64,000 nucleotides of DNA, from the IMG/VR virus record IMGVR_UViG_3300021964_009390, positions 1 to 64,000 of that record; one strand, 5' to 3'. Under the pieces are notes generated by a model. The model was given only the letters and a program-made list of their open reading frames with translations, searched no databases and was not told where the DNA came from. Made by a program: the position numbers and the translations under genes. This document shows, piece after piece, positions 5,707 to 41,157 of this stretch (position 1 is its first letter; each line of letters begins with the position of its first letter).

Positions 5707-5756
5707 TACGAGAGCGCCTAGAGCGTTGAAATGATACACACGCTCTAAAAAATTTA

Positions 5757-5789
5757 ACACCGGTCTTAACCGACCGGTGTTTCTTTTTG
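5757..5789 (+). terminator. Intrinsic terminator after the major capsid gene, probably bidirectional
   Basis: Stem ACACCGGTC/GACCGGTGT with a 6-nt loop, followed by TTCTTTTT. The clpC stop codon lies in the loop. A second hairpin TAGAGCGT/ACGCTCTA sits at 5719-5747. Confidence 0.85.
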
Positions 5790-8228
5790 TTCAATTACAA
5801 TCTCGTCGTCATGTAGCTTGATTACTACATCAGTTGTCCGCTCATTTTTTAAAATGTATTTAGCGAGTGGAGTCTGTATATGTGTTTGTATAGCACGTCT
5901 CAACGGCCTGGCCCCGAATTTGCTATCAAACCCTCGATCAACTAACATATTCCTCACCGGCCTGGTGATTTCTAAGTTGATCTGTTTCATATTCATACGG
6001 GTTATAAATTTTTTCAACTCACTATTCAAAATCTTTTTACATACATCCAATGTGAGACTGTTAAACATTACAATTTCATCCAACCGGTTTAAAAATTCCG
6101 GACGTAGATATTGCTGCAATTGTTTCTTCACATTGTCTAAATTATCCTGTTCATTAGAACCAAACCCTACTACATGATTTTTCTGCATCCGATCCGCACC
6201 GATATTAGACGTCATTAAAATGATACAATTTCTAAAATTAATAGTCACTCCTCGGCTATCAGTCAACTGCCCCTCATCTAACAATTGCAACAACAACTGC
6301 ATCACATCCGGATGTGCTTTTTCTATCTCATCAAACAATACAACACTGTATGGATTGTACCGTATTTGCTCGGTAAGTTGCCCACCCTCACCGTAACCAA
6401 CATAACCCGGAGGACTGCCAATCAATTTGCTGACAGAATGTGATTCCATTAATTCGCTCATGTCCACACGAATCATATTATCCATGTCCCCGTATATATG
6501 TTCCGCTAGTTGTTTGGCTAGATATGTTTTACCCACACCTGTAGGTCCCATCAACAAGAATGACCCAACAGGTTTACCCGGTTCATTGACATCAGTACGA
6601 CCACGTATCACACTGTCGCAAATTAAATTTACTGCTTGCTGTTGCCCTATCACCTTTTTATTAATGGTTCTTTCTAGCGACAGCAGCTTTTTACTCTCGC
6701 TACGTTTCAAATGCTGCAACGGGACCCCGCACCAGTTGCTTACTGTTTTACGTATATCTTCTTCTGTTATGGTAGTGGTTTTCTGATTATTTTTCACCCG
6801 TTCTAATGCATTGTATTTTTTCTTACGTAATCGCTTCTCCGCTTCTCTGTATGTTGCAGCTGCGATATAATCATCTTTATCTAGAAACTCATGAATCAAC
6901 TGTACGCTGTCCTGAATTTTTTCATCTATAGACAATACCGACTTGGGTATCTTACCCTTAGCTAATTTGACACGAGCTGCACATTCATCTAGTACATCTA
7001 TCGCTTTGTCTGGAAAAAATCTATCTGATATGTACCGTTCACTCAAACTAACAGCCGCTTCTATCGCATCCGGTGTGAACTCTACACTATGAAAGTCTTC
7101 ATATTTATATTTCAACCCATCTAGTATGTCTATAACCATATCATATTCCGGTTCATCTACAACAATTTTTTGAAATCTACGCTCAAGAGCACCATCACTT
7201 TCTATAAACTCTCTGTATTCATCAAATGTAGTTGTACCGATACAGCAAATACCACCTCTACTTAACGCAGGTTTTAAAATATTGGCGGCATCCATAGCAC
7301 CGTCCGCGTTACCAGCTCCAACTAACATATGGATCTCATCAATAAACACAATAGCGTTGTCAATATTGAGTAAATCATCCATGACCTGTTTCATACGCTC
7401 TTCAAACTGTCCGCGGAATTTTGTACCAGCCACCATCAAAGACAAATCTAGATTGTATATGTTTTTGTCTTTCAATTGTACCGGTACTAGATCGGAGGCA
7501 ATCAAATTGCACAAACCTTCTACAACAGCAGTCTTCCCCACTCCCGGTTCACCTACTAGCACCGGGTTGTTCTTTTGCCGGCGGACTAGAACTTGCATAA
7601 CGCGTTCAATTTCCGAGTCTCTACCAATCACAGGATCTAGCTCCCCTTGTTTGGCAAGTTCTGTCATGTTGCTGCTGAACATACGCAAAGCTTCACCTGG
7701 TGCCACAGTTGTTTCTTCCCCTCCGGTACCAACATTTTGCTCTTCGTTTTTTGTACCCCCGTTTTCGATTTGTGGATTTAAATAAGCCCGTAGGCTTTGT
7801 GCTAATTCCGGAAGATCTACACTATGTTCATATAGAAAATTAAAAGCTGGGCATTCTGTATGACATACAACCCCTAGAAATATATGCTCGGTACCTATAA
7901 ATGAATGGTCCATTTTGATACTAATGTTCCTGGCGATTTGCAACACCTTGTCAACATCATCAGAAGCGGGGATCTTTATTTTAGCTTCTAGTTTAGGATC
8001 CACTTTTTTGATGTCTAAATTGTCTAGGTAATGATCCAAACGCTCGATTAACCGCGATACATCCACCCGCTGTTCGTTTGCTAGTATGTCACATATGTAA
8101 CTGCCTTGTGTGTTTAGTGTAGCATACAACAGATGTAATGTGTTGATCTCACCATGGTTATATTTCTTGGCTGTGATTTGAGCTGCCGCTAATAAATCGC
8201 TAGCGCGAGGTGTAAAATTATACATCAT
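5766..8228 (-). CDS. clpC: ClpC/ClpA-type AAA+ unfoldase (ClpP partner)
   Basis: Double Clp-N domain, two Walker A motifs (GEPGVGKT, GPTGVGKT), pore loops GTKFRG and GYVGY, short UVR-like middle domain, VGF ClpP-docking tripeptide. Confidence 0.92.
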   Translation of the reverse strand: MMYNFTPRASDLLAAAQITAKKYNHGEINTLHLLYATLNTQGSYICDILANEQRVDVSRLIERLDHYLDNLDIKKVDPKLEAKIKIPASDDVDKVLQIARNISIKMDHSFIGTEHIFLGVVCHTECPAFNFLYEHSVDLPELAQSLRAYLNPQIENGGTKNEEQNVGTGGEETTVAPGEALRMFSSNMTELAKQGELDPVIGRDSEIERVMQVLVRRQKNNPVLVGEPGVGKTAVVEGLCNLIASDLVPVQLKDKNIYNLDLSLMVAGTKFRGQFEERMKQVMDDLLNIDNAIVFIDEIHMLVGAGNADGAMDAANILKPALSRGGICCIGTTTFDEYREFIESDGALERRFQKIVVDEPEYDMVIDILDGLKYKYEDFHSVEFTPDAIEAAVSLSERYISDRFFPDKAIDVLDECAARVKLAKGKIPKSVLSIDEKIQDSVQLIHEFLDKDDYIAAATYREAEKRLRKKKYNALERVKNNQKTTTITEEDIRKTVSNWCGVPLQHLKRSESKKLLSLERTINKKVIGQQQAVNLICDSVIRGRTDVNEPGKPVGSFLLMGPTGVGKTYLAKQLAEHIYGDMDNMIRVDMSELMESHSVSKLIGSPPGYVGYGEGGQLTEQIRYNPYSVVLFDEIEKAHPDVMQLLLQLLDEGQLTDSRGVTINFRNCIILMTSNIGADRMQKNHVVGFGSNEQDNLDNVKKQLQQYLRPEFLNRLDEIVMFNSLTLDVCKKILNSELKKFITRMNMKQINLEITRPVRNMLVDRGFDSKFGARPLRRAIQTHIQTPLAKYILKNERTTDVVIKLHDDEIVIEQKETPVG

Positions 8229-28863: not shown

Positions 28864-29103
28864 CTACTCTTGTTTGCCTCCTTTTTGCAGCAATGCGACC
28901 ACCAAAAGCAAGGTGATCACACCAGCAAGACTGGCACCTTCACCTACAAATCCATTTACTACAGATTGGAGGTTACCAATGACGTTAATACTAGCAGTTT
29001 CGCCAAAAACTACTTGCGCTACTACGAGAAGGCCGAGTACTGACAGAAGCACGGTCGTGACTCCACCAACTAGGCCCTTGATTGTTGATAATGTATCTTT
29101 CAT
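28864..29103 (-). CDS. Small two-TM membrane protein
   Basis: MKDTLSTIKGLVGG... with two hydrophobic helices; followed by a strong terminator. Confidence 0.7.
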   Translation of the reverse strand: MKDTLSTIKGLVGGVTTVLLSVLGLLVVAQVVFGETASINVIGNLQSVVNGFVGEGASLAGVITLLLVVALLQKGGKQE

Positions 29104-29160
29104 ATCCCCAATATTTATTCTAGACACTATCATTAGCAACTACTTTCAATAAATATACAT

Positions 29161-29439
29161 ATGTCTATCAAAACTTTCAAACAGTATGTGGAGATGCTCG
29201 CCCGGGACGCGAAAAAAGGAGACAAGATTAAAAACATTAATCCTGACTGTGAACATCATGGGTCTGAAGGTGAAATAGAAGATGTGGTTGACTTACCAGA
29301 AAAAGGATCAAAACAAGTAAAGAGCAAGCACAACATGCCAGGTAAGCTAATCAAATATAAAGTTTCTAATACCGATGGTAAAAATTATGATTCTGGTGAC
29401 ACGTTATACAAGGACCCGAGTCAACTTAAAAAACGCTAG
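29161..29439 (+). CDS. Putative virion protein (IKTFKQYVE N-terminus)
   Basis: N-terminal motif plus TAAATA 5 nt upstream. Confidence 0.6.
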   Translation: MSIKTFKQYVEMLARDAKKGDKIKNINPDCEHHGSEGEIEDVVDLPEKGSKQVKSKHNMPGKLIKYKVSNTDGKNYDSGDTLYKDPSQLKKR

Positions 29440-29456
29440 ACTTGTAGTCTATATAA

Positions 29457-31646
29457 TTAATTTTGTTCTAACTTCTTAATATACACTCCCCATACACAAT
29501 TTTCCAGGAGAGCTTCTCCTGCCCATTCCACGTCCTTTAAATTTAAAATATTTTCGAACCCAGACTCATGCCACTGCCACCGTCCGGAACCATAAATTCT
29601 ATCGTATGCCTCTTGGTTTCTAGCAAAATCATGCAACATCAATACATCCCCTTCTTCAGCTATAGGTGAGTAAGTCCCGAACTCTGCGTTTTTTGAATTA
29701 CCGTCTACGAGCCAGCAAGTTTTTTTATCTTGAGCTAGCTTCCGCAAATGCTCTATTGTCTTGGTATTAAAACAATCAAGAGGTTTAAATTTTATATTAT
29801 TAAATGTATCAAACATCTTTTGAGAGTGCCTGGGGAATGGGTCAATCGTATGTATCGGAGTTTGAGGACAAATAGTTGCCAAAAAGGCAGTCAGGCCCCC
29901 CTCCCCTGTACCTAGTTCAATAATTAAATCAAACTTGTTACGAGAAAAGTAATCATGGAAGGCGTGGTACGCTCCTGGATGTTGTTGTGATCGTAAACCT
30001 TTTAGGGAATCGCTCCACCCTCCTTCAAAACAAGGTCCGTTATATTCAGATTTGGATGTACGTAATAGTATGTCAAGCTCATCCGTACCAAGGTAAGTAT
30101 CTATTAGTCGTTGAAGTAAAAAGTCTTCCGGCATGATACCTTTTTGATGATGCCGGATTTGAGACGAATGTAGAGTTACTACAACTGTATCTTCGAGTAC
30201 AATATCGTCTAGCGGGATCGTTGCTGATTTGTATATGTCACTAAACGAGCCATGCCGGCTTTGCGCAAACTGAAGAGAGATTACATTCTCATCAATATAT
30301 TTTACTAAATTTCTATAACCGAGCTCTTTAATACCATATTTTGTAGGAGTGTTTAACAAATCTCCCCAGCCGATATGCAAGGACATAACAGCATTTACAG
30401 ATTCCATTACCTTTTTGAACACTTGAGACCTAGGCCTACATGCCATCGCGCAGATGTTAACGCTACCACACCCCGCATTTTCGAGAGGTTGAACCTGATC
30501 ATGTGTCCATGTATGGCTCATAATAGACTCGTACAGGTCTCCTACAACAAACATATCAGCGTCTAACCACATACCCCCATTCTCGTACAAGACCCTTTGC
30601 CGAGCGTAATCTGATTTAAATTCAACACATAGTGAGTCATATTCTTCTGGTATATCGTCAAACGTTGATTTTAACTTTTCAGTGTTCCACACTTCGAAGA
30701 CGCAATTAGAATTCTTTTCCATAGACTGTAAACATTTTTCAATGAAATACGGTTTTTCTCCCTCCCAAAATGTGAATAGTTTCCTTTCTTCGAAGAATCG
30801 CCAATCGTAACTGTCTAGTCTGTCAATAAGTGCGGTTCTTTCTTCTTCTGTGAATTCTTGATCAAACCTTTTCAAATGCAAATTCTCCATGATGAAATCA
30901 AAATACGTAGCCCCTGGATACAAAGGCCGGCCTGAGCCAGTATCGTTATTTTGAGTAGTGATTCCCTCAGATGTACATTGCAAATGGACATACGAAGGTT
31001 TACCTCTGTTAGGGTCTCCCCAATAATATACAAAACTATGGTCACCCATACCAACTGCTGGGTCTATACAGAGCATTTCAAATTTGGATGTCCATTGAGG
31101 ATGAGGGTGTTGCTTTTCCGCTTGCATGTTACCGAATCCATAATGGTCTAAAACGGATTTTTTGACTACAATACAACCTTCACAGTAATTGCGTATTGCG
31201 TTAATTTTAGGATACATCTCCAAATTGCTGTCTATTTGAAGCTGTTCTGTTGGCTTACAACCAAGATGTGTACCTTTATTCAACCACTTGACGGCATTGG
31301 ACAAATGCCACGGTAGGTAAATATCATCATCATCCCATATAGCGACGTATTCCGAATGCTGACCACCAAAACTGTCCACGTATGTAAGAGCCTTGTTATA
31401 TACATCCGAGATCGACTCAAACTCACCGGCGTTTATTAGACGTATGTTGTGTTGCTGTTTTAAAAATTCAGACAACTTTATTTCTACTCGGTGATTGTTA
31501 AAAATAATCAGCTCTTTATTAGGATAATCCTGTAACATAAAATACGATATAGCTGAACGTAATAACTCATATCGCCCCTTCGTCGCGCAAAGGCATGTCA
31601 CTTTAGGTACACCGTAAATGTATTCTGGTTCCGGCTTAACTTCCAT
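29457..31646 (-). CDS. Three-domain fusion: GT2 glycosyltransferase + GT32/capsular DxD glycosyltransferase + class I SAM methyltransferase
   Basis: N-terminus CATKGR...IWDDDDIYLP; middle FKSDYARQRVLYENGGMWLDAD; C-terminus IIELGTGEGG...LVDG...LMLHD. Confidence 0.8.
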   Translation of the reverse strand: MEVKPEPEYIYGVPKVTCLCATKGRYELLRSAISYFMLQDYPNKELIIFNNHRVEIKLSEFLKQQHNIRLINAGEFESISDVYNKALTYVDSFGGQHSEYVAIWDDDDIYLPWHLSNAVKWLNKGTHLGCKPTEQLQIDSNLEMYPKINAIRNYCEGCIVVKKSVLDHYGFGNMQAEKQHPHPQWTSKFEMLCIDPAVGMGDHSFVYYWGDPNRGKPSYVHLQCTSEGITTQNNDTGSGRPLYPGATYFDFIMENLHLKRFDQEFTEEERTALIDRLDSYDWRFFEERKLFTFWEGEKPYFIEKCLQSMEKNSNCVFEVWNTEKLKSTFDDIPEEYDSLCVEFKSDYARQRVLYENGGMWLDADMFVVGDLYESIMSHTWTHDQVQPLENAGCGSVNICAMACRPRSQVFKKVMESVNAVMSLHIGWGDLLNTPTKYGIKELGYRNLVKYIDENVISLQFAQSRHGSFSDIYKSATIPLDDIVLEDTVVVTLHSSQIRHHQKGIMPEDFLLQRLIDTYLGTDELDILLRTSKSEYNGPCFEGGWSDSLKGLRSQQHPGAYHAFHDYFSRNKFDLIIELGTGEGGLTAFLATICPQTPIHTIDPFPRHSQKMFDTFNNIKFKPLDCFNTKTIEHLRKLAQDKKTCWLVDGNSKNAEFGTYSPIAEEGDVLMLHDFARNQEAYDRIYGSGRWQWHESGFENILNLKDVEWAGEALLENCVWGVYIKKLEQN

Positions 31647-31681
31647 GAAGTTATTTATATACAGCTGTATATCTGTTCAAC

Positions 31682-32221
31682 TTATTGTTGAGCAGGCTGT
31701 TGCTGTTGCTGAGCAGGCTGTTGCTGTTGCTGAGCAGGCTGTTGCTGTTGCTGAGCAGGCTGTTGCTGAGCAGGCTGTTGCTGTTGCTGAGCAGGCTGTT
31801 TACCCAACTGCTGTTGAACTTGTTGTATCAGTTGCTCCACTTTGCCGATACGCTGATCTATTGCAGCAATTTTCTGAACGTTAGTGTCAATCTCTTGCTC
31901 TTGTGTTTGGTCTAGTTGATCAGCCGCTTGTTGCGCCTTCTCGATACCTTGTGCTTGTTGAGCATCCACCTCCGCTTCTTGTGAAGCTTGTTGTTCTGCG
32001 TCTTGCGCTTGTTGGTCTACTTGTCCTTGTAAATTGTCAATTTGTGTTCCTGCATCCTTACCTCGAGCGGCATCCACCGTGTCTTGTATTGCGGTGCTGA
32101 TTCCCCCGGTGGCTATATCTAAAGCATGCCCTCCTGCAGTCTTCGCGGCATTTTTCATGTTCTGCCAGTTAACCTCGTTAATTTTAACGTACTGTTTGTA
32201 AATATCATCAACTTTGCTCAT
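31682..32221 (-). CDS. Gln-rich late protein with a PAQQQQQ repeat tail
   Basis: TAAATA 5 nt upstream; coiled-coil-like Q/A-rich body. Confidence 0.75.
   Translation of the reverse strand: MSKVDDIYKQYVKINEVNWQNMKNAAKTAGGHALDIATGGISTAIQDTVDAARGKDAGTQIDNLQGQVDQQAQDAEQQASQEAEVDAQQAQGIEKAQQAADQLDQTQEQEIDTNVQKIAAIDQRIGKVEQLIQQVQQQLGKQPAQQQQQPAQQQPAQQQQQPAQQQQQPAQQQQQPAQQ
31690..31800. repeat. 21-bp tandem repeat GAGCAGGCTGTTGCTGTTGCT (4 full copies, one 15-bp copy, one partial copy)
   Basis: Read directly; encodes QQQQQPA on the minus strand. Confidence 0.95.
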
Positions 32222-32276
32222 GTTATTATTTATTTAGTTGCACCGGATAACAATATAATATATAATAAATAATTAC

Positions 32277-32660
32277 GGGCCTGTAAAGGATTCGACGTTC
32301 ATTGACAGTTAACAACCGCAAGTGAGAGAGATGCCTGGCTCTCTAAAAAGGCATACCCGCATACTTGGCGATATTCAAGATGCTAAGCGTGGTGTTCAAG
32401 AGGTCCTTCACGGGATCTTCTCCGAGCAGCCCGCTCTCTTGGCAGCTTAAGCTGTCACGTGTCACCCCGGATGCTCGATAAGGGAGTGATGCGTCAACAT
32501 CGAGCAAGCACCAGATATGTTGTCTGTTGATGACTGGTGTTGAAACTCAAATCGAAACAGGATAGGAGGTCTGCAGCCGAGAACAGTAGACTAAACTTGT
32601 GAACGAGGTGTTAACCAGAGATGTTAACGGACGCCGGTTCGACTCCGGCCAGGTCCACCA
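32277..32660 (+). ncRNA. ssrA: tmRNA (transfer-messenger RNA), 384 nt
   Basis: 5' GGGCCTG pairs with 3' CAGGTCC-ACCA, including the G3:U alanine determinant. Also GGATTCGAC, the T-arm GCCGG-TTCGACT-CCGGC, pseudoknot 1 (GAGAGAG/CTCTCT with ATGCCT/AGGCAT), and a tag ORF ending ALLAA-TAA. Confidence 0.95.
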
Positions 32661-32912
32661 TTTTCATGAAATATACAATATTATCCATCATACTACCATG
32701 AGGCTCACAAAGTATCAAAAAGCTAGACTACTAGAGTTTGAATGGAACGTTGTTGACAACGGCGTGGACAACACGTGTTGGTTGAGGATAGACAAAAACG
32801 ATGGTCGAGTGTTTGAAGACGTCAAACAATTGCTAGATTGCAGTGATGGTACAGACCATATTAAAATTTTGATCGTGGCACACAGTGGTCGAGCCATCGA
32901 CCCGGTCAGTCA

Positions 32913-33653
32913 TTGAGTATATATATGGTTTGTTTTAAAAAACAAGTACGTAAGGTAAGTGTAGAACAACGCGGGGAATTTGCATATAGCTTAGGTAACA
33001 TAATAACATGGTCACTTACCCTCAAACCAGGGTACCGTCCGGTTGTGGACCAACATACGAGCAATTACCCTAACACACTGGCCAGCGATATAATAGAGTA
33101 TGCCAAAGACGACAATACACCTGGCCATCAAAACAGATTGAAAAATATCTACGAAAATATAATCAAACCAAAATTGAGTTATACAAGTAAAATATATGTA
33201 CATTTGAGACTAGGAGATTGTTCGATATCTAGAAGAGTTGTAGATAAGAACAAAATAACTTATGTGGAAAACCCTGTGAATACTACTCATTTTAAAAATA
33301 CTGTTATAGATATATACAAACACGACCAAACCACTTGTATCAATTTTGTTACTGGTGTTCATAATCATAAAGATTTAAAACATAATAAATATCTACAAAA
33401 AGGCCGACCTGGTCAAGGTTCATATGATAATATGGTTGAACAACTCGAAACACTAAAAACATTCTTAGAAGATAATTATATAACATATGATTTTTCTATT
33501 AACAACCACCCAGACGATGATTTTTTAAATATGGTTGGCTGTAAACAAGTGGTAACAACATATGGTAGTTTCGGTAAATATGTTAGAATGTTCCGCGCAT
33601 TAGGTGGTGCTAATGACGATATAAATTTATGTAACAAAAATGTGGAGCGCTAG
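32913..33653 (+). CDS. GT11-like (alpha-1,2-fucosyltransferase-like) protein
   Basis: YVHLRLGD and DDDFLNM...GSFG motifs. Confidence 0.5.
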   Translation: MSIYMVCFKKQVRKVSVEQRGEFAYSLGNIITWSLTLKPGYRPVVDQHTSNYPNTLASDIIEYAKDDNTPGHQNRLKNIYENIIKPKLSYTSKIYVHLRLGDCSISRRVVDKNKITYVENPVNTTHFKNTVIDIYKHDQTTCINFVTGVHNHKDLKHNKYLQKGRPGQGSYDNMVEQLETLKTFLEDNYITYDFSINNHPDDDFLNMVGCKQVVTTYGSFGKYVRMFRALGGANDDINLCNKNVER

Positions 33654-33691
33654 TGGTCCTAGCTTTATAAAAAAGTATAACTATATAATAT

Positions 33692-34483
33692 ATGTTCTAT
33701 TGCTTTGACGATTTAAATATAATTGTACATACACCACCAAAAAATGCGTGTACCACTGTAAAAGAATACATGTGGAACCAGCTACGCGTAAAGCATCCTG
33801 ACTTACCAAATCATCACCCACATGCGCGATCCATGGTGGAATACATGATAAGTGAACGTGCATGGGTTAGAGAGAAGGATATACCTGCTAGAATAAATGA
33901 TCGAGGGTATAAATTATATACAATATACAGAGACCCATACACCAGATTTTATAGCGCTTTACATCAAAAATTTATCGCTCATCACCCAGCTGGTAACAAA
34001 AATTTACTCCATCCGGAAACCCCTAGTCAAAAAAGAGGAGGGGAGTTTTACAACTGGTTTAAAAGTATACACGGGCAAGATATATCTAAGATAACAAATA
34101 AACAATTGATAGACTACCATTGTGGAACATATACTAGCATAGTAGACCCACATTTTACACCAATATTTAATAATGATATATACAATAACATAATCGATTA
34201 CAAAAACATTATTATATTAAATATTGATTCAAATTTAAATAAAAATTTGGATGAAATTTTTAAAGAGCGTACCACTACCTTTAAATTAAAAAGACATAAC
34301 ACAAGTACTTACAACACAAAATACCTGGCAGATTTCAATGAAAAAACATTTTTAGAAAACTGTATCGATGATAATAGATGTATAAACAAAAGCGAGTATT
34401 ACAAGAGCTCGGTACGTGAATCGTTCAAAATTGATTTTGATATGTACAACAAATTAGATAAGTTATCTATATATAGTACCTAA
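33692..34483 (+). CDS. Sulfotransferase family 2 protein
   Basis: 5'-PSB-like PKNACTTVK and 3'-PB-like RDPYTRFYSA. Confidence 0.75.
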   Translation: MFYCFDDLNIIVHTPPKNACTTVKEYMWNQLRVKHPDLPNHHPHARSMVEYMISERAWVREKDIPARINDRGYKLYTIYRDPYTRFYSALHQKFIAHHPAGNKNLLHPETPSQKRGGEFYNWFKSIHGQDISKITNKQLIDYHCGTYTSIVDPHFTPIFNNDIYNNIIDYKNIIILNIDSNLNKNLDEIFKERTTTFKLKRHNTSTYNTKYLADFNEKTFLENCIDDNRCINKSEYYKSSVRESFKIDFDMYNKLDKLSIYST

Positions 34484-35173
34484 TTTTTTTTGTTGCTTAG
34501 ACCAGTGTGTACCACCTCTTGTTATTGGGTATATCTTTATATATTTAATAATATCTTCTCTACATACTAGATTGATACTATGGTCTACTTTTAACTTGTC
34601 GATGTAAAATAGAAGGTTTTGTTTCCAATCAGTATCACTAGGGTAACCAATCAGTGAGGAGATATAATGCTGAATTACACCAGGCCCTGTACAGCTCCAA
34701 ACATTATTATGTTTTCTCTTTTCAATATTAACACATACATTACGCCATATTGTGGAGATATGTATATTTCTAGGTGTGGATATCAAAGGACTATTAGAAA
34801 TTCGAAACTTTCCCCGGGCATTAATTTTACAAACCAGTGTAATGTCGTACTCCGGAGCGATAAACAACTGTTTAATTTTTTTAAGATTACTGTGTATAAT
34901 TCGATGACTAGTATCCCAATAACTGCCCCCGTCAACCAAACATCTGACTATCCTAAACATATCCGACCGGGCGGCCGGTAATGTATCATGGAAATTTTCA
35001 AAATATTCACAAACTTCCGGAGACATGTTGTCACGTATGTATTCACTAGCAGTGTCTCTGTTATACAAAACATAGCTTTCACTCGAAACAATATTTTCCA
35101 TTGACTTAATATTAGGAGTTAGCCGTGGGTCTATATTAATTGTGTCCCAGTATTGAAATAATGTTTTTATCAT
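34463..35173 (-). CDS. GT32/OCH1-like DxD glycosyltransferase
   Basis: LFQYWD, AARSDMFR...GGSYWD, TGPG. Confidence 0.75.
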   Translation of the reverse strand: MIKTLFQYWDTINIDPRLTPNIKSMENIVSSESYVLYNRDTASEYIRDNMSPEVCEYFENFHDTLPAARSDMFRIVRCLVDGGSYWDTSHRIIHSNLKKIKQLFIAPEYDITLVCKINARGKFRISNSPLISTPRNIHISTIWRNVCVNIEKRKHNNVWSCTGPGVIQHYISSLIGYPSDTDWKQNLLFYIDKLKVDHSINLVCREDIIKYIKIYPITRGGTHWSKQQKKLGTIYR

Positions 35174-35190
35174 ATAAGTATATATAACTT

Positions 35191-35961
35191 ATGGGAAAAT
35201 TACAACATGTATATGTAGCTACTGTATGTACCGGTAACCGATTAGAAGAGTTTAAATTGTTAAAACGGACATTAGAAAGATATCATCGTTGTACATGGTA
35301 TGTGACATGTGACACGTATAGTCACACGACCATCAAACAATATCATAATGTAGTTGCATTAGAGAAGCAGTTACAACCCGCTAGAAACACTGGAGAAAGC
35401 TTTCAAAACTTCACCGCGGTAGTTGAGAACAAGATGGAGAGCATGATACATGGTATAAACCAGCATGGTTGGTGCCTATTCTTGGATACCGATTTGATAT
35501 TTTTAAATAAACTAGACGGTGAGTTTACATCTTATATTAATAATGACACAAAACGGTTATTTGTAACTGATCACTATTCTTTAACACCACGAAAATACGG
35601 TAGATTCAACGCCGGAATGATCGCGATGAAAGATGTAGATACCGCTCGTCGATGGTCGCAATTGACATATGAGCTGTCATGCCCAGTAGGTCTAGAACAA
35701 AAACCAATTGAAAGTCTAGTACGTGAGAATAAACCCAACACCATTATCGCTGGTCCGCAATATAATTACGGGTGGTGGAGAGATAGGAACATAGATAATG
35801 CGCATAATGTTGTAGGAGGTCAATTCTGTATTAATAATAAACCGGTGGTAAACTTACATGTACATACAGATAAACTGTTGCAAAGAGCCCGGGAGTCTAG
35901 ATGGCTCGCTAAAATAAAAACCGACGTAAAAGAGTGTTCAAATTATCAAAATATATTATAA
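35191..35961 (+). CDS. GT-A fold nucleotide-sugar transferase
   Basis: LFLDTDLIF, FNAGMI, EQK..E, YNYGWW. Confidence 0.65.
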   Translation: MGKLQHVYVATVCTGNRLEEFKLLKRTLERYHRCTWYVTCDTYSHTTIKQYHNVVALEKQLQPARNTGESFQNFTAVVENKMESMIHGINQHGWCLFLDTDLIFLNKLDGEFTSYINNDTKRLFVTDHYSLTPRKYGRFNAGMIAMKDVDTARRWSQLTYELSCPVGLEQKPIESLVRENKPNTIIAGPQYNYGWWRDRNIDNAHNVVGGQFCINNKPVVNLHVHTDKLLQRARESRWLAKIKTDVKECSNYQNIL

Positions 35962-36698
35962 ACATACTTAGCAGTATTGTAACATATATTACTCACTTCA
36001 CTATCATTAAGCTTTATTTTTTTACAAATCTTATTCAATCTATCAAACTGTGTAATTTCATTAGAATATGGATAATCACTACCAAACATGATCTTGTTAG
36101 AAGGCATGTACCGTAAGAAATGTTTTACATCTTTCCAGATTGAACTACCTTTGAAATAACCTAATGTTAACGATAGGTCATAATACATATTACCAATTTT
36201 CCTCGTATGCATGAAGTAATCCAATATCTTCGACCCCCCAGCATGTGCTATAACAAACTTTTTATGTGGGTATCTCAATGCTAGCTTTATATTATGTTCT
36301 AGTGATGGTTGTATTGACAAATCGCACCAATCGTACCAGCCATCAATTATAATAGGAATCCTGTCCGGTATTATAGATATTATATCTGAAATAGTATCAT
36401 AGTCATGTGTACTAATCTGTTGAATTTTCGAATGTATTTTGGCACCTTGTATCTCACCTCGGTCTACCCTGTCTAAAAAGATTGATATATTATCCTCTGA
36501 TCGGAAATCGAATATACATGTAAGACTGTAACGTTTAGATGAATTATTGATAGTATCTCTGTACAATTCAAACAACTCTAGAAAATTGACTATCAGGTTA
36601 CCACCGGTGATATCAAGATTATAGTTATCAAAACCTACTACATTTTTTTCAAATACATCACCCTCTAGGTGTATATGACTATCAAAAATCATCGACAC
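35946..36698 (-). CDS. Amidohydrolase family 2 protein
   Basis: FDSHIH, GAKIHS, IAHAGG, YDLS, MFGSDYP. Confidence 0.85.
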   Translation of the reverse strand: MSMIFDSHIHLEGDVFEKNVVGFDNYNLDITGGNLIVNFLELFELYRDTINNSSKRYSLTCIFDFRSEDNISIFLDRVDRGEIQGAKIHSKIQQISTHDYDTISDIISIIPDRIPIIIDGWYDWCDLSIQPSLEHNIKLALRYPHKKFVIAHAGGSKILDYFMHTRKIGNMYYDLSLTLGYFKGSSIWKDVKHFLRYMPSNKIMFGSDYPYSNEITQFDRLNKICKKIKLNDSEVSNICYNTAKYVYNIF

Positions 36699-37740
36699 TT
36701 TCCTTTACAATCAACCACCCAGGTCTATGAGTTTTATCTACCACTGACATATTATCAAAGTTATCAGGTACAATATGACTATCGAGTACATCCACATACT
36801 TATTTTTAATATTATTAAATGATTGTATATCATTTACTTTAGGGTATAAAACAGTTACATTGTACGTACTATCAGTTTTGTTTATCGTCTTAAGCTCTCT
36901 AGCATATAACAGTTCATAAGGGGTAGGGGATATAAATTCCGGAAGAACTCTAGATGCGATATTACATCCACCGCCTCTACATGCAAAATCAATTAGATTG
37001 AAATTTCCGGAATCATTAACAACCCACTCTGAGTGAGTTAACCCGTTCTGCAAATTAGTGAAACTTACAAACATATCATTGTATTTTAAAATATGTTTAT
37101 ATTTAGAATTATTAGCAGTTGAGTAACTAATTTTATTCGCGACCGCAAATTGACTATGAGACTTCACACCTACAATAATAGAAGTATGTTCACCGTTCAT
37201 ACATACACCTTCAATTGTGATTTCAGTACCTTGCAGGAGTGGTTGTACTAATGAATCAGTAGTAATAACTACACTACCTGCAGGTTCAACTACATGTATG
37301 CTTTTACTATTGCTACCAATAACAGGTTTAACCACCATAGAATTGCTATTGCTATTTATATATTCAGTACCTCTCAATATTTTTTTTACTGAAGGTGTAG
37401 GTATATTATACTGCTTACATAGTCTATACATACTGTGCTTGTTACAATAATACTTTAATGTATTTGTCGATATATGAGGTAAATTATAATGACCGCTAAC
37501 AATACTGGCTGTTTGTGTTAAGTGATCTGATTGATCTGTAATGACACTATGTATGTCTATATTTTTTAAAAAATTTATAATACCCCGTATATCACAAGCA
37601 TCATGACATATCCATTGAAAATTATATCTAACATTTATCGGTCGATTTGGGGCGATGACTAATGTATTGTATTTGCTAGCAACATAGTTTATCAAGTCAA
37701 CCTGGCAGACCCCTGCGCCCAATACTACCACAGTACTCAT
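36682..37740 (-). CDS. ATP-grasp ligase
   Basis: VLGAG, NKHSM, VVKP..GSNSKSI, HSEW...IDFACRGGG. Confidence 0.8.
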   Translation of the reverse strand: MSTVVVLGAGVCQVDLINYVASKYNTLVIAPNRPINVRYNFQWICHDACDIRGIINFLKNIDIHSVITDQSDHLTQTASIVSGHYNLPHISTNTLKYYCNKHSMYRLCKQYNIPTPSVKKILRGTEYINSNSNSMVVKPVIGSNSKSIHVVEPAGSVVITTDSLVQPLLQGTEITIEGVCMNGEHTSIIVGVKSHSQFAVANKISYSTANNSKYKHILKYNDMFVSFTNLQNGLTHSEWVVNDSGNFNLIDFACRGGGCNIASRVLPEFISPTPYELLYARELKTINKTDSTYNVTVLYPKVNDIQSFNNIKNKYVDVLDSHIVPDNFDNMSVVDKTHRPGWLIVKESVDDF

Positions 37741-38318
37741 CTTGTTAAATTATAGAGCATCGAGTAATAATTATTGACCACTGGTTCAAAATATGTAACT
37801 TTAATATCACCAAAGTACTCGTCGTTCAAATAATCTCGACCGCCTGAACCGCTGATATATTCTCTACCATCTACTGCTCTTACAATATTTGCTAAAAGCT
37901 CAGACTTGTGCCCTTTAACGTTCAACTCACTAGCCATCACAATTGGAGTTTCAATACCCATCCTAACCATACACCATTTTATACTACTCATATTAATATC
38001 TACAAGCTTATCATACATGTATATGTCAGATATATCAGTTTTTAAATTTTGAAATATGGTCTGATTTATTTTTTTTCTCCAGATAACATCGGCTGATACA
38101 GTAACATCTTTAATAATCTTCCGGGTAGCTTTTTTTTCAACCGGAACAGTTATCCATTGCACCTTCCCGGACAACAACTTTATTTTGTTTCTATTTTGAA
38201 AATTATTTTTACAGAATTTAACATCATCTAATATTACAAATATATCTGCCAATTTTAACTTTTGGAAAAAACCTTCATATGGGAAATGTTCAGGCTGATG
38301 TATCGCAACTTTCATCAA
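37737..38318 (-). CDS. WbqC-like protein
   Basis: IHQPEHFPYEGFF.K....FVILDDVKF...FQNRNKI, YISGSGGRDY. Confidence 0.9.
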   Translation of the reverse strand: MMKVAIHQPEHFPYEGFFQKLKLADIFVILDDVKFCKNNFQNRNKIKLLSGKVQWITVPVEKKATRKIIKDVTVSADVIWRKKINQTIFQNLKTDISDIYMYDKLVDINMSSIKWCMVRMGIETPIVMASELNVKGHKSELLANIVRAVDGREYISGSGGRDYLNDEYFGDIKVTYFEPVVNNYYSMLYNLTR

Positions 38319-38959
38319 ATAAATAACCTATGTGGTATGTAACCCTCCGCATACTTGCAAGTTCTAGACAACGCACCATTTGAAAGAGCTTTAGAAGTTA
38401 TATAATCCTCCAAAGTTAGTTCATATTTATCGATACCTGCAGCTCCAAGTATTTGAGACCTGTAGAATGACGATATTTTGACTTTGTTACTTAGTTGTGT
38501 ACCATTTAACTCGGTGTATAATGTCGGTACAAATCTCAAGGTTGAAGGTGTCTCGTAGAGTAAAATATTCCGCTTATATCTGCATGCAGCAACTGCCGCC
38601 TGGTTTACTACTAGATGATCCTGGTGCGTGTCTTCATGATATGGTATGAATATATTGTGATAATGATTGTTAGTAACCAGGTTTTGTATAAAAATAATAA
38701 GCGAGTTTAAGTCTTTGTATAACTGTGTATCTACACCACCAGGGTACCTGATATGATTTACTTTGCAACCTAACGTACCGCGTAGCTCATTTACCGCGGC
38801 AATTTCCTCATCAATACGTACCTTGTCAGAAGGTAGCAAATCCTTATTCGCGACCAGTAGTATATCAAATTTATAACGGTCACTATACTTTAAAATATAA
38901 CCACCGCAGCTTATGACAAAGTCGTCCGGGTGCGGGGCAATTATTAAGATTTTATCCAT
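38315..38959 (-). CDS. PIG-L/LmbE family deacetylase
   Basis: IAPHPDD, DTHQDH, YETPST. Confidence 0.9.
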   Translation of the reverse strand: MDKILIIAPHPDDFVISCGGYILKYSDRYKFDILLVANKDLLPSDKVRIDEEIAAVNELRGTLGCKVNHIRYPGGVDTQLYKDLNSLIIFIQNLVTNNHYHNIFIPYHEDTHQDHLVVNQAAVAACRYKRNILLYETPSTLRFVPTLYTELNGTQLSNKVKISSFYRSQILGAAGIDKYELTLEDYITSKALSNGALSRTCKYAEGYIPHRLFI

Positions 38960-38989
38960 GTCGTATTATAGTATATATTGTAGTATGTT

Positions 38990-39631
38990 TCAAGTATGGT
39001 GGATTGAGCTCTCGAATTGGTTTTGAGTCACTATAGTTGGTTCTAACCAATACACATCTAAATCGAGAAACCTAGCTGCTTTGTTCATCCACCAGTCGAG
39101 AGGTAAATATACATGGGTGATTTCATTAGAGAAATGTTCATATAATTTATACGCACATTTTGGTGATATAATGTATGAGTCGGTACAACGTGTACAACCA
39201 TCACCTCCCCATTTTGTGGCATAGTTACACTTTTTATATATGTTAATTCCGGTGGTTTGTTGTTTTAGAGGGATATGTAAATCACAACCATCACCAATAA
39301 ACAACATGTCATAATCCTCCGGTAAAATGTGTGTATATATGTTTAGTTTATTGATAAAATCGTTACATAATTTGACATCATCTTCTAAAATTAACACATA
39401 ATTAGTCTGTTGTAATTTTTGCGAATCCCATATTGATAGATGTTTACAAAAACATGAAATCTCTCCTGGTGACAACTGGTTACTAAATTTACATTTATAA
39501 TTATGAGGTATGTTGTTACAGTCATAGTCGAATACATACTCCCACTCGACATTATATAATTTCAATTGCTCCTCCATATGCGCATGCCGTTCATTAAATG
39601 ATTTACATGTAACTACAAATGTATTATACAT
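38990..39631 (-). CDS. GT25 glycosyltransferase
   Basis: GEISCFCKH, LILEDDV, YIISPKCAYKL, PLDW. Confidence 0.85.
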   Translation of the reverse strand: MYNTFVVTCKSFNERHAHMEEQLKLYNVEWEYVFDYDCNNIPHNYKCKFSNQLSPGEISCFCKHLSIWDSQKLQQTNYVLILEDDVKLCNDFINKLNIYTHILPEDYDMLFIGDGCDLHIPLKQQTTGINIYKKCNYATKWGGDGCTRCTDSYIISPKCAYKLYEHFSNEITHVYLPLDWWMNKAARFLDLDVYWLEPTIVTQNQFESSIHHT

Positions 39632-40268
39632 ATTTACCCAACCAAAATTTAGTGTTAGCTTGTAAGTGTGTGGAACGAGTACGCCAGTAAGAGTATGTCA
39701 ATTTGTCGAAATTATAAACTGTGTTGCTAATTGTATCGTATACATGGTTTAAATATTCAATAGTGATGTCACTATAATCGGTGGTCCACAACACCGGTAA
39801 ATCGTTATATTTTCTCATATACGATGAATCCCAACATACCGGGACTTTAATTATAGGTATGCATTTCGCAAGTATAGACTCGTAATGCCTATGGCAATCA
39901 ACACCATTCCCTTCTGGTGAAAAGCAAAACTTATGTTGTTTTAACATGTCAAAATAAGAATTAAAATTAGTTAACTTAGGGTTACATGTAGTCAAATATT
40001 GCGGACCTAAATTGTGTTGAACCGTACTGTAATGTGACCTACGTAACTTAGAGTAACTATGTTCCCCGGACGCAGTGACGCTACTGTAACACAGTTTGTT
40101 TTTCCCGGTCTGTTTTAAACTACACTTTTGAAAGTGTGACCATGCTTGAGGCGCTACTCCGATCGGATGCACCACTGGTCGATCTTTACCGTCAGTAGTA
40201 CTCCCACCGCCAATCAAATTGGTTTTATCTATACAGCAAGGATCCCAATCTTTATATGTTATATTCAT
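39624..40268 (-). CDS. Exostosin/GT47-like protein
   Basis: HKFCFSPEGNGVDCHRHYESILAKCIPII. Confidence 0.65.
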   Translation of the reverse strand: MNITYKDWDPCCIDKTNLIGGGSTTDGKDRPVVHPIGVAPQAWSHFQKCSLKQTGKNKLCYSSVTASGEHSYSKLRRSHYSTVQHNLGPQYLTTCNPKLTNFNSYFDMLKQHKFCFSPEGNGVDCHRHYESILAKCIPIIKVPVCWDSSYMRKYNDLPVLWTTDYSDITIEYLNHVYDTISNTVYNFDKLTYSYWRTRSTHLQANTKFWLGKYV

Positions 40269-41157
40269 TAATAATATTATTTAAAAACATTTTCAACCGG
40301 TTTACATCATAACTGTTAACGTTTTTAACTTTGTCAGTTATTAGCATCTCATTGTATAGATCATCGTCATGGTCAAGGGAAACAATTTTATCAATAAATT
40401 GACTATCAGTATGAAAATCCACCCTATTTAAAAAACTATGCTGTACATGGTCCATATATACATCCGGGTCGCCCCAGTATATGGGTATTGTGTTTGCCAG
40501 GAAACCGTACCACGGCTTCTCAGTAAAATACCCACTATTGGAGCTGTTCTCAAACGATATTATAAATTTGTATTGAGATACTCTATTCAATGTCTCTTGA
40601 TACCCTCGAGGCCATGGCCTGTCAATATTCAAGAGCCTTTTACCGGTACAGTCAATACGTTTGTATGTGGATAATTTCTTTACAAATTCTTCCCGGAACG
40701 GTACAGGGTTTGAATTGATAAAACAACAAAATTTAGTTTTTTTAATTTTTGCTAAACCTTTAGCCTGCCCAGTAGAGAAATACTTAGGTAACAGTGAACC
40801 AAAGACAGGTTCGACGGCAGCTAGTGGTATGTATATACACCGGCGACTGTCTGAGCACCTATCCATGGAGATCAAATACCGGTTGTTTGATATTTGTAGT
40901 ATATTGTCAGGCGATTTAAAACCATACCTTTTTATATTTTCTCCACTAAAACATATTATGTAATCAAATTCAGTATATTTAGACCAATTGATTTTTTGAG
41001 AATTGCAGACACTATACACGAGTATTTTTTTGGATGTTTTAAATAGTACCGGTAAACACTCCCGGAACACTGATTTGCCTATCCATGGAAAAAACCAATT
41101 GTTAACATCTCTAACTAAAAACGTAACATTTTTTACTGTTACTGTATAGTCTTTCAT
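40252..41157 (-). CDS. GT10 alpha-1,3/4-fucosyltransferase
   Basis: KFCCFINSN, YKFIISFENS..GYFTEKP...TIPIYWG. Confidence 0.85.
   Translation of the reverse strand: MKDYTVTVKNVTFLVRDVNNWFFPWIGKSVFRECLPVLFKTSKKILVYSVCNSQKINWSKYTEFDYIICFSGENIKRYGFKSPDNILQISNNRYLISMDRCSDSRRCIYIPLAAVEPVFGSLLPKYFSTGQAKGLAKIKKTKFCCFINSNPVPFREEFVKKLSTYKRIDCTGKRLLNIDRPWPRGYQETLNRVSQYKFIISFENSSNSGYFTEKPWYGFLANTIPIYWGDPDVYMDHVQHSFLNRVDFHTDSQFIDKIVSLDHDDDLYNEMLITDKVKNVNSYDVNRLKMFLNNIINEYNI

What the first reader, a model, noticed from the sequence alone, without database searches (positions are those of the whole stretch)
32277..32660. tmRNA with an unusually long 27-codon tag
Seen: 12 nt after pseudoknot 1 comes TACTT-GGC, matching the UA-NNN-G resume context. 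The frame 32367-32450 reads GDIQDAKRGVQEVLHGIFSEQPALLAA*. Known: most tags are about 10 residues ending in LAA. Inference: the extra amphipathic segment may be a docking site for a specific adaptor or unfoldase, such as the phage ClpC. The resume codon position is inferred.
Basis: partly seen in the sequence, partly recalled or inferred. Interest (0 to 1): 0.62.

Follow-up and report, generated by a model that had tools for sequence, protein, structure and literature searches.

The report
Phage tmRNA with a long tag
A marine jumbo phage carries its own ribosome-rescue RNA (tmRNA) that writes a 27-residue tag; long tags prove normal for big phages, and modelling suggests the extra part of the tag docks onto the phage's own ClpC unfoldase.

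Summary
Window 32277-32660(+) is a complete one-piece tmRNA (Rfam 90.3 bits, ARAGORN). The tag frame has 27 codons from GGC at 32367, and homologous tmRNAs confirm that resume site. The genome is a 222 kb estuarine/marine T4-like jumbo phage without SmpB or ClpP, but with a ClpC-type unfoldase that keeps its ClpP-docking VGF loop.

"Unusually long" is true only against the bacterial mode of 10:
- 64 cyanobacterial tags: 14-26 codons
- Bxz1: 25
- sister and cousin phage tmRNAs: 18, 27, 33 and 35
- 29 tmRNAs from other Clp-bearing jumbo phages: 21-34

The 27-codon frame is kept without indels in five variants. Near-identical RNA appears in two metatranscriptomes. No sequenced bacterium carries this tmRNA's PK1 or 3'-end sequence.

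The docking idea gained indirect support:
- A controlled complex model puts the amphipathic segment on the ClpC N-domain (score 0.76, best control 0.00; mark reached by 51/78 solved and 2/108 mismatched pairs; runs agree >=82%; partner pLDDT >=68).
- The interface is conserved on both sides.
- In 28 of 34 other tmRNA-bearing phage records, the tmRNA lies within 5 kb of a Clp ATPase gene.

Binding and tagging remain untested, and the host is unknown. Verdict: new variant of a known kind.

The parts
32277..32660 (+). one-piece tmRNA (ssrA) gene, 384 nt, 51% G+C in a 39% G+C phage genome
   Evidence: ARAGORN; Rfam RF00023 90.3 bits; conserved with compensatory changes in 7 homologues; RNA-library contigs
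32277..32307 (+). 5' half of the tRNA-like domain (acceptor strand with G3)
   Evidence: ARAGORN domain; G3.U70 kept in 7 of 7 sequences
32622..32660 (+). 3' half of the tRNA-like domain: T-arm, acceptor strand with U70, discriminator A, encoded CCA
   Evidence: C-G to G-C compensatory change in the T stem in two relatives
32325..32355 (+). pseudoknot 1; its 24-mer (32333-32356) is the signature of this phage tmRNA lineage
   Evidence: the 24-mer is absent from 185,579 bacterial species genomes and present in 9 phage-like metagenome contigs
32362..32369 (+). resume context UACUU followed by the resume codon GGC (32367-32369)
   Evidence: ARAGORN; aligned to the Rfam consensus resume site; same column in homologues
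32367..32450 (+). tag reading frame: 27 codons plus TAA; the peptide ends in LLAA
   Evidence: no indels in 5 variants, 20 variable nt distributed 6/4/10 over codon positions 1/2/3
32376..32417 (+). codons 4-17: amphipathic segment absent from the 18-codon sister tags; holds 9 of the 12 tag residues predicted to contact ClpC (the others are 3, 18 and 20)
   Evidence: hydrophobic moment; peptide alignment; interface; variation
32386..32435 (+). predicted hairpin inside the tag frame
   Evidence: folds in all 5 variants (56-nt core z -2.56, 2 of 200 shuffles); 96% of cells paired, 2 compensatory pairs, but the shuffle control is not significant
32440..32457 (+). helix 5 with the stop codon in its loop
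   Evidence: G.U to A-U change in one variant
32261..32266 (+). TATAAT, a -10-like hexamer 10 nt upstream of the mature 5' end (weak TTGCAC -35 at 32238-32243, 17-nt spacer)
   Evidence: read from the sequence; below the threshold of the scan, so inference only
5766..8228 (-). phage ClpC-type Hsp100 unfoldase, 820 aa, next to the gp23 capsid gene (4150-5706)
   Evidence: phrog_4871 E 5e-244; Pfam; best solved relatives are S. aureus and B. subtilis ClpC, E about 1e-213; phage-only clade
7764..8228 (-). ClpC N-domain (aa 1-155), predicted docking surface for the tag at aa 98-151
6162..6170 (-). VGF tripeptide (aa 687-689), the ClpP-docking loop
   Evidence: alignment to S. aureus ClpC; conserved as [IVL]GF in other phage Clp ATPases

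Best explanation
This is a working, phage-encoded tmRNA of an estuarine/marine T4-like jumbo phage. The phage has no SmpB of its own, so the RNA must use host factors. It would be charged with alanine by the host AlaRS (G3.U70), bind host SmpB and EF-Tu, and enter ribosomes stalled on broken mRNAs during infection. Translation would resume at GGC (32367) and add alanine plus 27 residues. The tag looks bipartite. Its C-terminal end (LLAA) is a classical Clp-type degron. The preceding amphipathic segment (residues 3-18) is a phage-lineage insertion that most likely docks onto the N-domain of the phage's own ClpC. ClpC would then deliver the tagged protein to host ClpP through its VGF loop. The phage would thereby clear stalled ribosomes and route the products through its own unfoldase.

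Shown: the gene, its structure, the frame, conservation of the frame, and presence in RNA libraries. Inferred: charging, tagging, ClpC docking and degradation. My confidence that this is a functional tmRNA with a 27-codon tag is about 0.9. The figure of 0.45 below is for the whole chain including ClpC docking.
For: The gene and frame are confirmed. Seven homologues keep G3.U70 and show compensatory changes in the acceptor stem, T-arm and helix 2. Five natural variants keep 27 codons without indels. Contigs from two metatranscriptomes cover the tmRNA with 1 difference in 245 nt and 6 in 288 nt, while none covers the flanking genes. The genome has no SmpB or ClpP. ClpC is full length with Clp_N, two AAA+ modules and VGF.

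Complex prediction of ClpC 1-155 with the tag gave a score of 0.76 in all three runs against a best control of 0.00. That mark was reached by 51 of 78 solved complexes and 2 of 108 mismatched pairs. The runs agree in at least 82% of contacts and the partner pLDDT is at least 68. The contacts fall on tag residues 3, 6, 7, 9-14, 17, 18 and 20.

Interface residues of ClpC are more conserved in the phage ClpC clade than the rest of the N-domain (0.75 against 0.50, permutation p 0.0016). Only 2 of 12 tag contact residues vary, and 5 of 7 variable tag positions lie outside the interface.

Of 49 phage records chosen only for having a Clp ATPase, 34 carry a tmRNA, and 28 of those lie within 5 kb of the Clp gene. 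One has ClpC-ClpP-ankyrin-tmRNA within 2.5 kb. All the linked Clp proteins examined keep the ClpP loop. Phage G also carries a tmRNA plus ClpX and ClpP (PMC12484599).
Against: Nothing here measures binding, tagging or degradation, and the complex score is a model's confidence only.
- In the window the two genes are 24 kb apart.
- The complete relative G001 has a 33-codon tag but no ClpC.
- The large jumbo-phage clade with tight Clp-tmRNA linkage has Clp ATPases without an N-domain, so N-domain docking cannot be the general rule.
- That linkage probably reflects few independent events.
- The most abundant natural variant of the tag ends in PLTA instead of LLAA.
- Part of the conservation of the frame can be explained by an RNA hairpin, and codons 1-10 are invariant even at wobble positions.
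- The folded partner chain carried three upstream in-frame residues that are not part of the tag.
- Co-occurrence of this tag type with ClpC could not be tested in relatives.
Confidence: 0.45

Rival explanations
1. It is an ordinary ribosome-rescue tmRNA. Only the C-terminal hydrophobic end matters and is read by host proteases such as ClpXP. The extra codons are tolerated padding, kept mainly because they form an RNA hairpin that compacts a long message region. Phage ClpC has an unrelated job, for example in head assembly next to gp23.
For: An internal hairpin is predicted in all five variants with two compensatory pairs. Similar hairpins are predicted in the 35-codon sister (z -2.73) and in G002 (z -2.28). 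Codons 1-10 are invariant at wobble positions. The ClpC-gp23 adjacency is conserved. G001 has a long tag without ClpC. Long tags also occur in bacteria.
Against: The complex prediction passes with clean controls (0.76 against 0.00; mark reached by 51/78 solved and 2/108 mismatched pairs; runs agree in >=82% of contacts; partner pLDDT >=68). The interface is conserved on both sides. The segment is significantly amphipathic. Clp-tmRNA gene linkage is seen in other phages. The hairpin covariation is not significant (125 of 500 shuffles). Bxz1, L265 and L271 long tags show no significant hairpin.
Confidence: 0.35
2. The extra segment is a binding site for a host factor, not for phage ClpC. Candidates are an SspB-like adaptor, ClpS, or another protease such as Lon or FtsH. 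The phage would thereby steer tagged proteins within the host network.
For: This is the logic of the bipartite E. coli tag with SspB (established knowledge). The segment is amphipathic. Sister tags share the NIVPFA/NIVSFA core of cyanobacterial tags, which suggests host mimicry in that branch.
Against: The host is unknown, so no candidate partner could be tested. The window's own tag has lost the NIV core. The only partner tested, phage ClpC, passed.
Confidence: 0.08
3. The RNA mainly acts as a decoy that soaks up host SmpB and shuts down host trans-translation, as reported for the minimal tRNA-like-domain-only molecule of mycobacteriophage DS6A. The tag itself would be irrelevant.
For: The phage has no SmpB, so the RNA must compete for the host's. 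The DS6A precedent is described in PMC4131195 and PMC11915505.
Against: The full message region, all pseudoknots and a 27-codon frame without indels are kept across variants. A decoy would not need them.
Confidence: 0.04
4. Tagging resumes further downstream in the same frame and gives a short conventional tag.
For: The resume codon is inferred, not measured. ARAGORN miscalls resume sites in related phage tmRNAs.
Against: Rfam aligns GGC to the consensus resume codon. The spacing from PK1 and the UA at -5/-4 are canonical. In the sister tmRNAs the same GGC column starts tags that align from their first residues with cyanobacterial tags. The same column gives open frames in 29 other phage tmRNAs.
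Confidence: 0.03

Closest known systems
Mycobacteriophage Bxz1 (Bixzunavirus) tmRNA
   Same: A phage-encoded one-piece tmRNA without a phage SmpB, encoding a long tag (25 codons, verified). Listed among phages with ssrA in PMC4131195.
   Different: Different host phylum and phage family, and no sequence relation. The Bxz1 tag is strongly acidic (net -7), not amphipathic (hydrophobic-moment shuffle p 0.88), and ends in LV. I found no report of a Clp unfoldase partner for it, though I did not search for one specifically.
Bacillus phage G: tmRNA plus phage ClpX and ClpP
   Same: A giant phage carrying both a tmRNA and its own Clp machinery (PMC12484599).
   Different: Its tag is short (13 codons). 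The unfoldase is ClpX with its own ClpP, whereas the window phage has ClpC and no ClpP. The paper draws no link between the two.
E. coli SsrA tag with SspB and ClpXP (bipartite degron)
   Same: A C-terminal LAA-type degron combined with an upstream element bound by a separate docking surface is the proposed logic here (established knowledge).
   Different: In E. coli the tag has 10 coded residues and the upstream element binds an adaptor protein. Here the upstream element is an inserted amphipathic segment of about 15 residues, predicted to bind the unfoldase's own N-domain, and both RNA and unfoldase are phage-encoded.
tmRNAs of huge phages (Al-Shayeb et al. 2020, PMC7162821)
   Same: Large environmental phages that encode a tmRNA among other translation genes.
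   Different: That paper records presence only (some with SmpB). The passages I read do not analyse tag length, tag families or linkage to Clp ATPase genes.
Cyanobacterial tmRNA tags (one-piece and two-piece)
   Same: The 18-codon sister tags of this phage lineage share the NIVPFA/NIVSFA core and the hydrophobic AA end with cyanobacterial tags.
   Different: There is no nucleotide similarity beyond the T-arm. The phage tags start with Gly, not Ala. The window's tag has lost the NIV core and gained the insertion. The phage has no psbA.
B. subtilis / S. aureus ClpC with MecA-type adaptors
   Same: Same domain order, best full-length sequence match, a ClpP loop, and an N-domain used as a docking platform.
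   Different: The phage clade is only 43-47% identical to any bacterial ClpC and lacks the UVR motif of the middle domain.

Membership tests
tmRNA, one-piece (Rfam RF00023) | Covariance-model score above the curated threshold over the full model | tested here: met
   90.3 bits against 47, model positions 1-374 of 374
tmRNA, one-piece (Rfam RF00023) | tRNA-like domain with a 7-bp acceptor stem, G3.U70 alanine identity pair, T-arm and 3' CCA | tested here: met
   G.U kept in 7 of 7 homologues, with compensatory changes in the acceptor stem and T stem
tmRNA, one-piece (Rfam RF00023) | Pseudoknot 1 followed at about 10-12 nt by a resume codon in a UA-NNN context | tested here: met
tmRNA, one-piece (Rfam RF00023) | Short frame ending in hydrophobic residues, with its stop codon in the loop of helix 5 | tested here: met
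   Ends in LLAA; TAA lies in the loop of helix 32440-32457. The frame has 27 codons, long for bacteria but usual for phages.
tmRNA, one-piece (Rfam RF00023) | Partner protein SmpB | tested here: not met
   No PF01668 match in the complete 222 kb phage genome, so the RNA would depend on host SmpB. This does not bear on the identity of the RNA gene.
tmRNA, one-piece (Rfam RF00023) | Made as a stable RNA | tested here: inconclusive
   Contigs of two metatranscriptome runs cover 32291-32614 nearly identically, with none on the flanking genes. Contigs cannot exclude DNA carry-over or show the ends of the RNA.
tmRNA, one-piece (Rfam RF00023) | Alanylation and trans-translation activity | not testable with these tools
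   Needs biochemistry or a reporter assay
ClpC-type class I Hsp100 unfoldase | Clp_N domain, two AAA+ modules, D2-small domain, short middle domain | tested here: met
   Pfam; end-to-end alignment to S. aureus and B. subtilis ClpC
ClpC-type class I Hsp100 unfoldase | ClpP-docking tripeptide loop in D2 | tested here: met
   VGF at aa 687-689, aligned with the loop of S. aureus ClpC
ClpC-type class I Hsp100 unfoldase | UVR motif in the middle domain | tested here: not met
   No PF02151 match in the window protein or in the phage clade P0001-P0029, whereas most bacterial hits have it
Bipartite degron (C-terminal degron plus upstream docking element) | C-terminal LAA-like end | tested here: met
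   LLAA in the window and in three other variants; PLTA in the abundant variant L094
Bipartite degron (C-terminal degron plus upstream docking element) | Upstream element that binds a docking surface of the proteolytic machinery | tested here: inconclusive
   Model only: score 0.76, best control 0.00; mark reached by 51/78 solved and 2/108 mismatched pairs; runs agree in >=82% of contacts; partner pLDDT >=68. The interface is conserved.

The most novel reading that the evidence does not exclude
Jumbo phages run a private tagging-and-degradation circuit. A phage tmRNA writes a custom long tag onto products of stalled host ribosomes, and a phage Clp unfoldase reads that tag (here through its N-domain) and feeds the products to ClpP, separately from the host SsrA/ClpX route. 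The window phage would be one instance, and the Clp-tmRNA gene module seen in 28 other T4-superfamily jumbo-phage records would be another form of the same circuit.
Probability: 0.4. Interest if true: 0.8.

Novelty: new variant of a known kind. Interest (0 to 1): 0.6.

Why it matters
Phage tmRNAs have been catalogued, but none of the papers I read assigns them a role. If the long tags are matched to phage-encoded unfoldases, large phages would control the fate of failed translation products as well as ribosome rescue. That could help recycle amino acids and ribosomes while host mRNA is being destroyed. It could also keep the host's own quality-control route from interfering.

Such a pair would also be a natural orthogonal degron/unfoldase system, which is useful for controlled protein degradation in bacteria. 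The idea is directly testable with a peptide, one protein domain and a reporter.

There is a practical point too. ARAGORN found no tmRNA in 21 of 30 of the other jumbo-phage tmRNA loci examined here and gave a doubtful tag start in at least 3 more, so surveys built on it under-report them.

Tried and rejected
Searches that found nothing:
- blastn of the tmRNA against 50,697 phage records.
- Related loci through the neighbouring 246-aa protein, and through single-sequence ClpC patterns.
- The exact 3'-end 27-mer and the PK1 24-mer in 185,579 bacterial species genomes, and the PK1 24-mer in IMG/VR.
- Literature search for cyanobacterial tag strings, and the supplements of the tmRNA database paper.

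- Relatives cannot be drawn for a virus record, and a taxon name is not accepted as a centre.
- Whole-record tmRNA search of the ClpC-bearing metagenome contigs of 209 and 123 kb failed because the records are not held. Only one short IMG/VR record belongs to the phage ClpC sub-clade. Co-occurrence of this tag type with ClpC in close relatives therefore stayed untested.
- One search failed on a bad reference.
I re-ran it with all sequences read from stored files.

Ideas rejected or left open:
- Host inference: there is no psbA. ClpC has no close bacterial relative. There is no nucleotide similarity to cyanobacterial tmRNAs beyond the T-arm. A cyanobacterial host is therefore only a lead from the tag motif.
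- ARAGORN found no two-piece tmRNA in the four weak hits of genome G012.
- The hairpin covariation test was not significant.
- The very high read depth at 31697-31753 is a simple-repeat artefact.
- The sigma-70 scan found no promoter upstream of the gene on the + strand.

Full report
1. THE OBSERVATION

Rfam's tmRNA model matches the same coordinates end to end: 90.3 bits against a threshold of 47, E 8.7e-34. The sequence shows a 7-bp acceptor stem with G3.U70, discriminator A and an encoded CCA. PK1 ends about 11 nt before the resume codon, in the context UACUU|GGC. Rfam aligns that site to its consensus resume site, and the extra codons appear as one 50-nt insertion relative to the model.

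2. THE GENOME

The window is the first 64 kb of a 222,461-bp IMG/VR virus record, rated complete, at 39.3% G+C.
- It encodes a gp23-type capsid protein (phrog_138) that is only about 33% identical to those of cyanomyoviruses, its best named relatives.
- It has two tRNAs.
- It has no SmpB, ClpP or psbA.
- It has an 820-aa ClpC-type unfoldase at 5766-8228(-), beside the capsid gene, which keeps the ClpP-docking VGF loop.
- Sequencing runs that hold the locus come from estuary and marine samples.

3. THE tmRNA LINEAGE

No bacterial species genome out of 185,579 holds the 3'-end 27-mer or the PK1 24-mer. Nine metagenome contigs hold the PK1 24-mer, and seven of them carry genes homologous to this phage's genes in mosaic order. 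L095 is the same phage, L098 shares only a short ORF fragment beside the tmRNA, and the short L096 shares only the tmRNA itself.

Five distinct variants keep 27 codons with no indel. Of 20 variable nucleotides, 6, 4 and 10 fall at codon positions 1, 2 and 3.

Sister tmRNAs share about 87% of the first 100 nt and the 3' end, but have tags of 18 codons (L098, L099) and 35 codons (L096). The 35-codon reading starts from the homologous GGC; ARAGORN picks an internal start there.

A peptide alignment shows a common C-terminal core and a lineage-specific insertion just after the resume codon. Two cousin phages with 65-70% capsid identity carry a different tmRNA with 33-codon tags. Those two tags differ by 8 synonymous and 6 non-synonymous codons, while the RNAs are 74% identical overall.

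The family alignment keeps G3.U70 in all seven sequences and has compensatory changes in the acceptor stem, T-arm and helix 2.

4. PRESENCE IN NATURE

In two independent marine DNA runs the tmRNA segment is about ten times deeper than the flanking phage DNA, because a 91%-identical variant (L094 type) from a commoner relative is present.

In two metatranscriptome runs, contigs cover 32291-32614 with 1 difference in 245 nt and 6 in 288 nt, and none covers the flanking genes. This fits a stable, abundant RNA, but contigs cannot prove transcription.

5. IS 27 CODONS UNUSUAL?

Against the bacterial mode of 10 (PMC11915505), yes. Against relevant comparators, no.
- 64 tags sampled from the cyanobacterial phylum: 14-26 codons.
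- Bxz1: 25 codons, and phage G: 13, both verified from the records.
- 29 tmRNAs from other Clp-bearing jumbo phages: open frames of 21-34 codons at the homologous resume column, one of them also 27.

The 18-codon sister tags share the NIVPFA/NIVSFA core of cyanobacterial tags, but there is no nucleotide similarity beyond the T-arm. I did not sample tags from other phyla, so I did not test whether that core is specific to cyanobacteria. A cyanobacterial link is therefore a lead, and the host remains unknown.

6. THE ClpC IDEA

The phage ClpC belongs to a phage and metagenome-only clade (55-78% identity). It is 43-47% identical to assorted bacteria, lacks the UVR motif, and is always beside gp23. 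The complete cousin G001 has a long tag and no ClpC.

(a) Amphipathic segment. Tag residues 4-17 are significantly amphipathic.

(b) Complex prediction. I folded ClpC residues 1-155 with window:32358-32447, which is the tag plus three upstream in-frame residues needed to reach the tool's minimum length. The score was 0.76 in all three runs against a best control of 0.00. That mark was reached by 51 of 78 solved complexes and 2 of 108 mismatched pairs. The runs agree in at least 82% of contacts and the partner pLDDT is at least 68. This supports binding and does not show it. Contacts lie on ClpC 98-151 and on tag residues 3, 6, 7, 9-14, 17, 18 and 20. These ClpC residues are more conserved than the rest of the N-domain (0.75 against 0.50, p 0.0016), and the variable tag positions mostly avoid the interface.

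(c) Gene linkage. Of 49 IMG/VR records picked only because they encode a Clp ATPase, 34 have a tmRNA, against 2 of 10 capsid relatives without ClpC. In 28 of the 34 the tmRNA lies within 5 kb of the Clp gene. One record has ClpC-ClpP-ankyrin-tmRNA; the main clade has Clp, an M20-like peptidase, an unknown ORF, then the tmRNA. All the linked Clp proteins examined keep an [IVL]GF loop. The complete records are T4-superfamily jumbo phages of 272-369 kb.

Caveats: these records are related to one another, so independent events are few. The main-clade Clp also lacks an N-domain, so the docking mode proposed for the window cannot be general.

7. THE RIVAL RNA-LEVEL READING

A hairpin is predicted inside the frame (32386-32435) in all variants. 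It is 96% paired with two compensatory pairs, but the shuffle control is not significant. Similar hairpins appear in the 35- and 33-codon frames, but not significantly in Bxz1, L265 or L271. Codons 1-10 are invariant even at wobble positions. Part of the apparent coding constraint may therefore be RNA constraint, and the two readings are not exclusive.

8. VERDICT

This is a real, probably expressed, phage-borne tmRNA with a confirmed 27-codon frame. The length is ordinary for jumbo phages. The proposed pairing with phage ClpC rose from speculation to a testable hypothesis at about 0.4. It is a new variant of a known kind, with interest 0.6.

Noticed in passing
G163-G211 records; loci L265-L302: A conserved module of Clp ATPase, M20-like peptidase, unknown ORF and tmRNA, spanning about 2-3 kb, occurs in a clade of T4-superfamily jumbo phages of 272-369 kb. 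28 of 34 tmRNAs lie within 5 kb of the Clp gene. I found no description of this in the papers searched.
   Followed up: partly
L298 (record G167, 29000-36000): ClpC-like (845 aa), ClpP (PF00574, E 3e-86), an ankyrin-repeat protein and a tmRNA with a 25-codon tag are clustered within 2.5 kb. The record is a fragment without a capsid gene, so its viral nature is not confirmed.
   Followed up: partly
L265-L294, L084, L096: ARAGORN found no tmRNA in 21 of 30 jumbo-phage tmRNA loci that Rfam detects (L265-L294), and gave doubtful tag starts in L266, L283 and L285. It also missed G001 (L084) and miscalled L096. Surveys that rely on it will undercount phage tmRNAs and mis-state their tags.
   Followed up: partly
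L269 (record G168): A 34-codon tag starts like the G001/G002 tags (AEDN...) and ends like the window tag (...EPALLAA). This hints at modular exchange of tag segments between phage tmRNA lineages.
   Followed up: no
L087 (IMG/VR contig of 134.8 kb): An unrelated huge-phage fragment carries a two-piece (permuted) tmRNA with a normal 10-residue tag, next to a tRNA with anticodon CTA (an amber suppressor, called Pyl by ARAGORN). It shares the exact 31-nt 3' end with the window tmRNA.
   Followed up: partly
window 31690-31800: A 21-nt tandem repeat forms a Gln/Pro-rich low-complexity tail of the minus-strand ORF 31682-32221. It attracts enormous spurious read depth in metagenomes.
   Followed up: yes
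window 4150-8228; L100, L102, L103, L006: ClpC is always directly beside the gp23 capsid gene and near the prohead protease in this sub-clade, and the phage ClpC clade lacks the UVR motif of bacterial ClpC. A role in head assembly or capsid-protein folding is an alternative function.
   Followed up: partly
window 29457-41157: A low-G+C (33-34%) cluster of sugar-modifying genes includes a 729-aa multi-domain glycosyltransferase, an ATP-grasp protein and a GT10 fucosyltransferase-like protein. It may serve virion or host-surface glycan modification.
   Followed up: no
window 32277-32660 in runs X3 and X4: The L094-type tmRNA variant, whose tag ends in PLTA, is about ten times more abundant than the window phage in two marine metagenomes. 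The commonest natural form of this tag therefore lacks the canonical LAA end.
   Followed up: partly
L200-L229 (Cyanobacteriota sample): The 30 best-scoring tmRNA hits in the Cyanobacteriota sample (genomes of about 1.9-7.1 Mb) have 18-26-codon tags of an ANKKNLFA... or AKTNVFAL... type, quite unlike the classical ANNIV tags.
   Followed up: no
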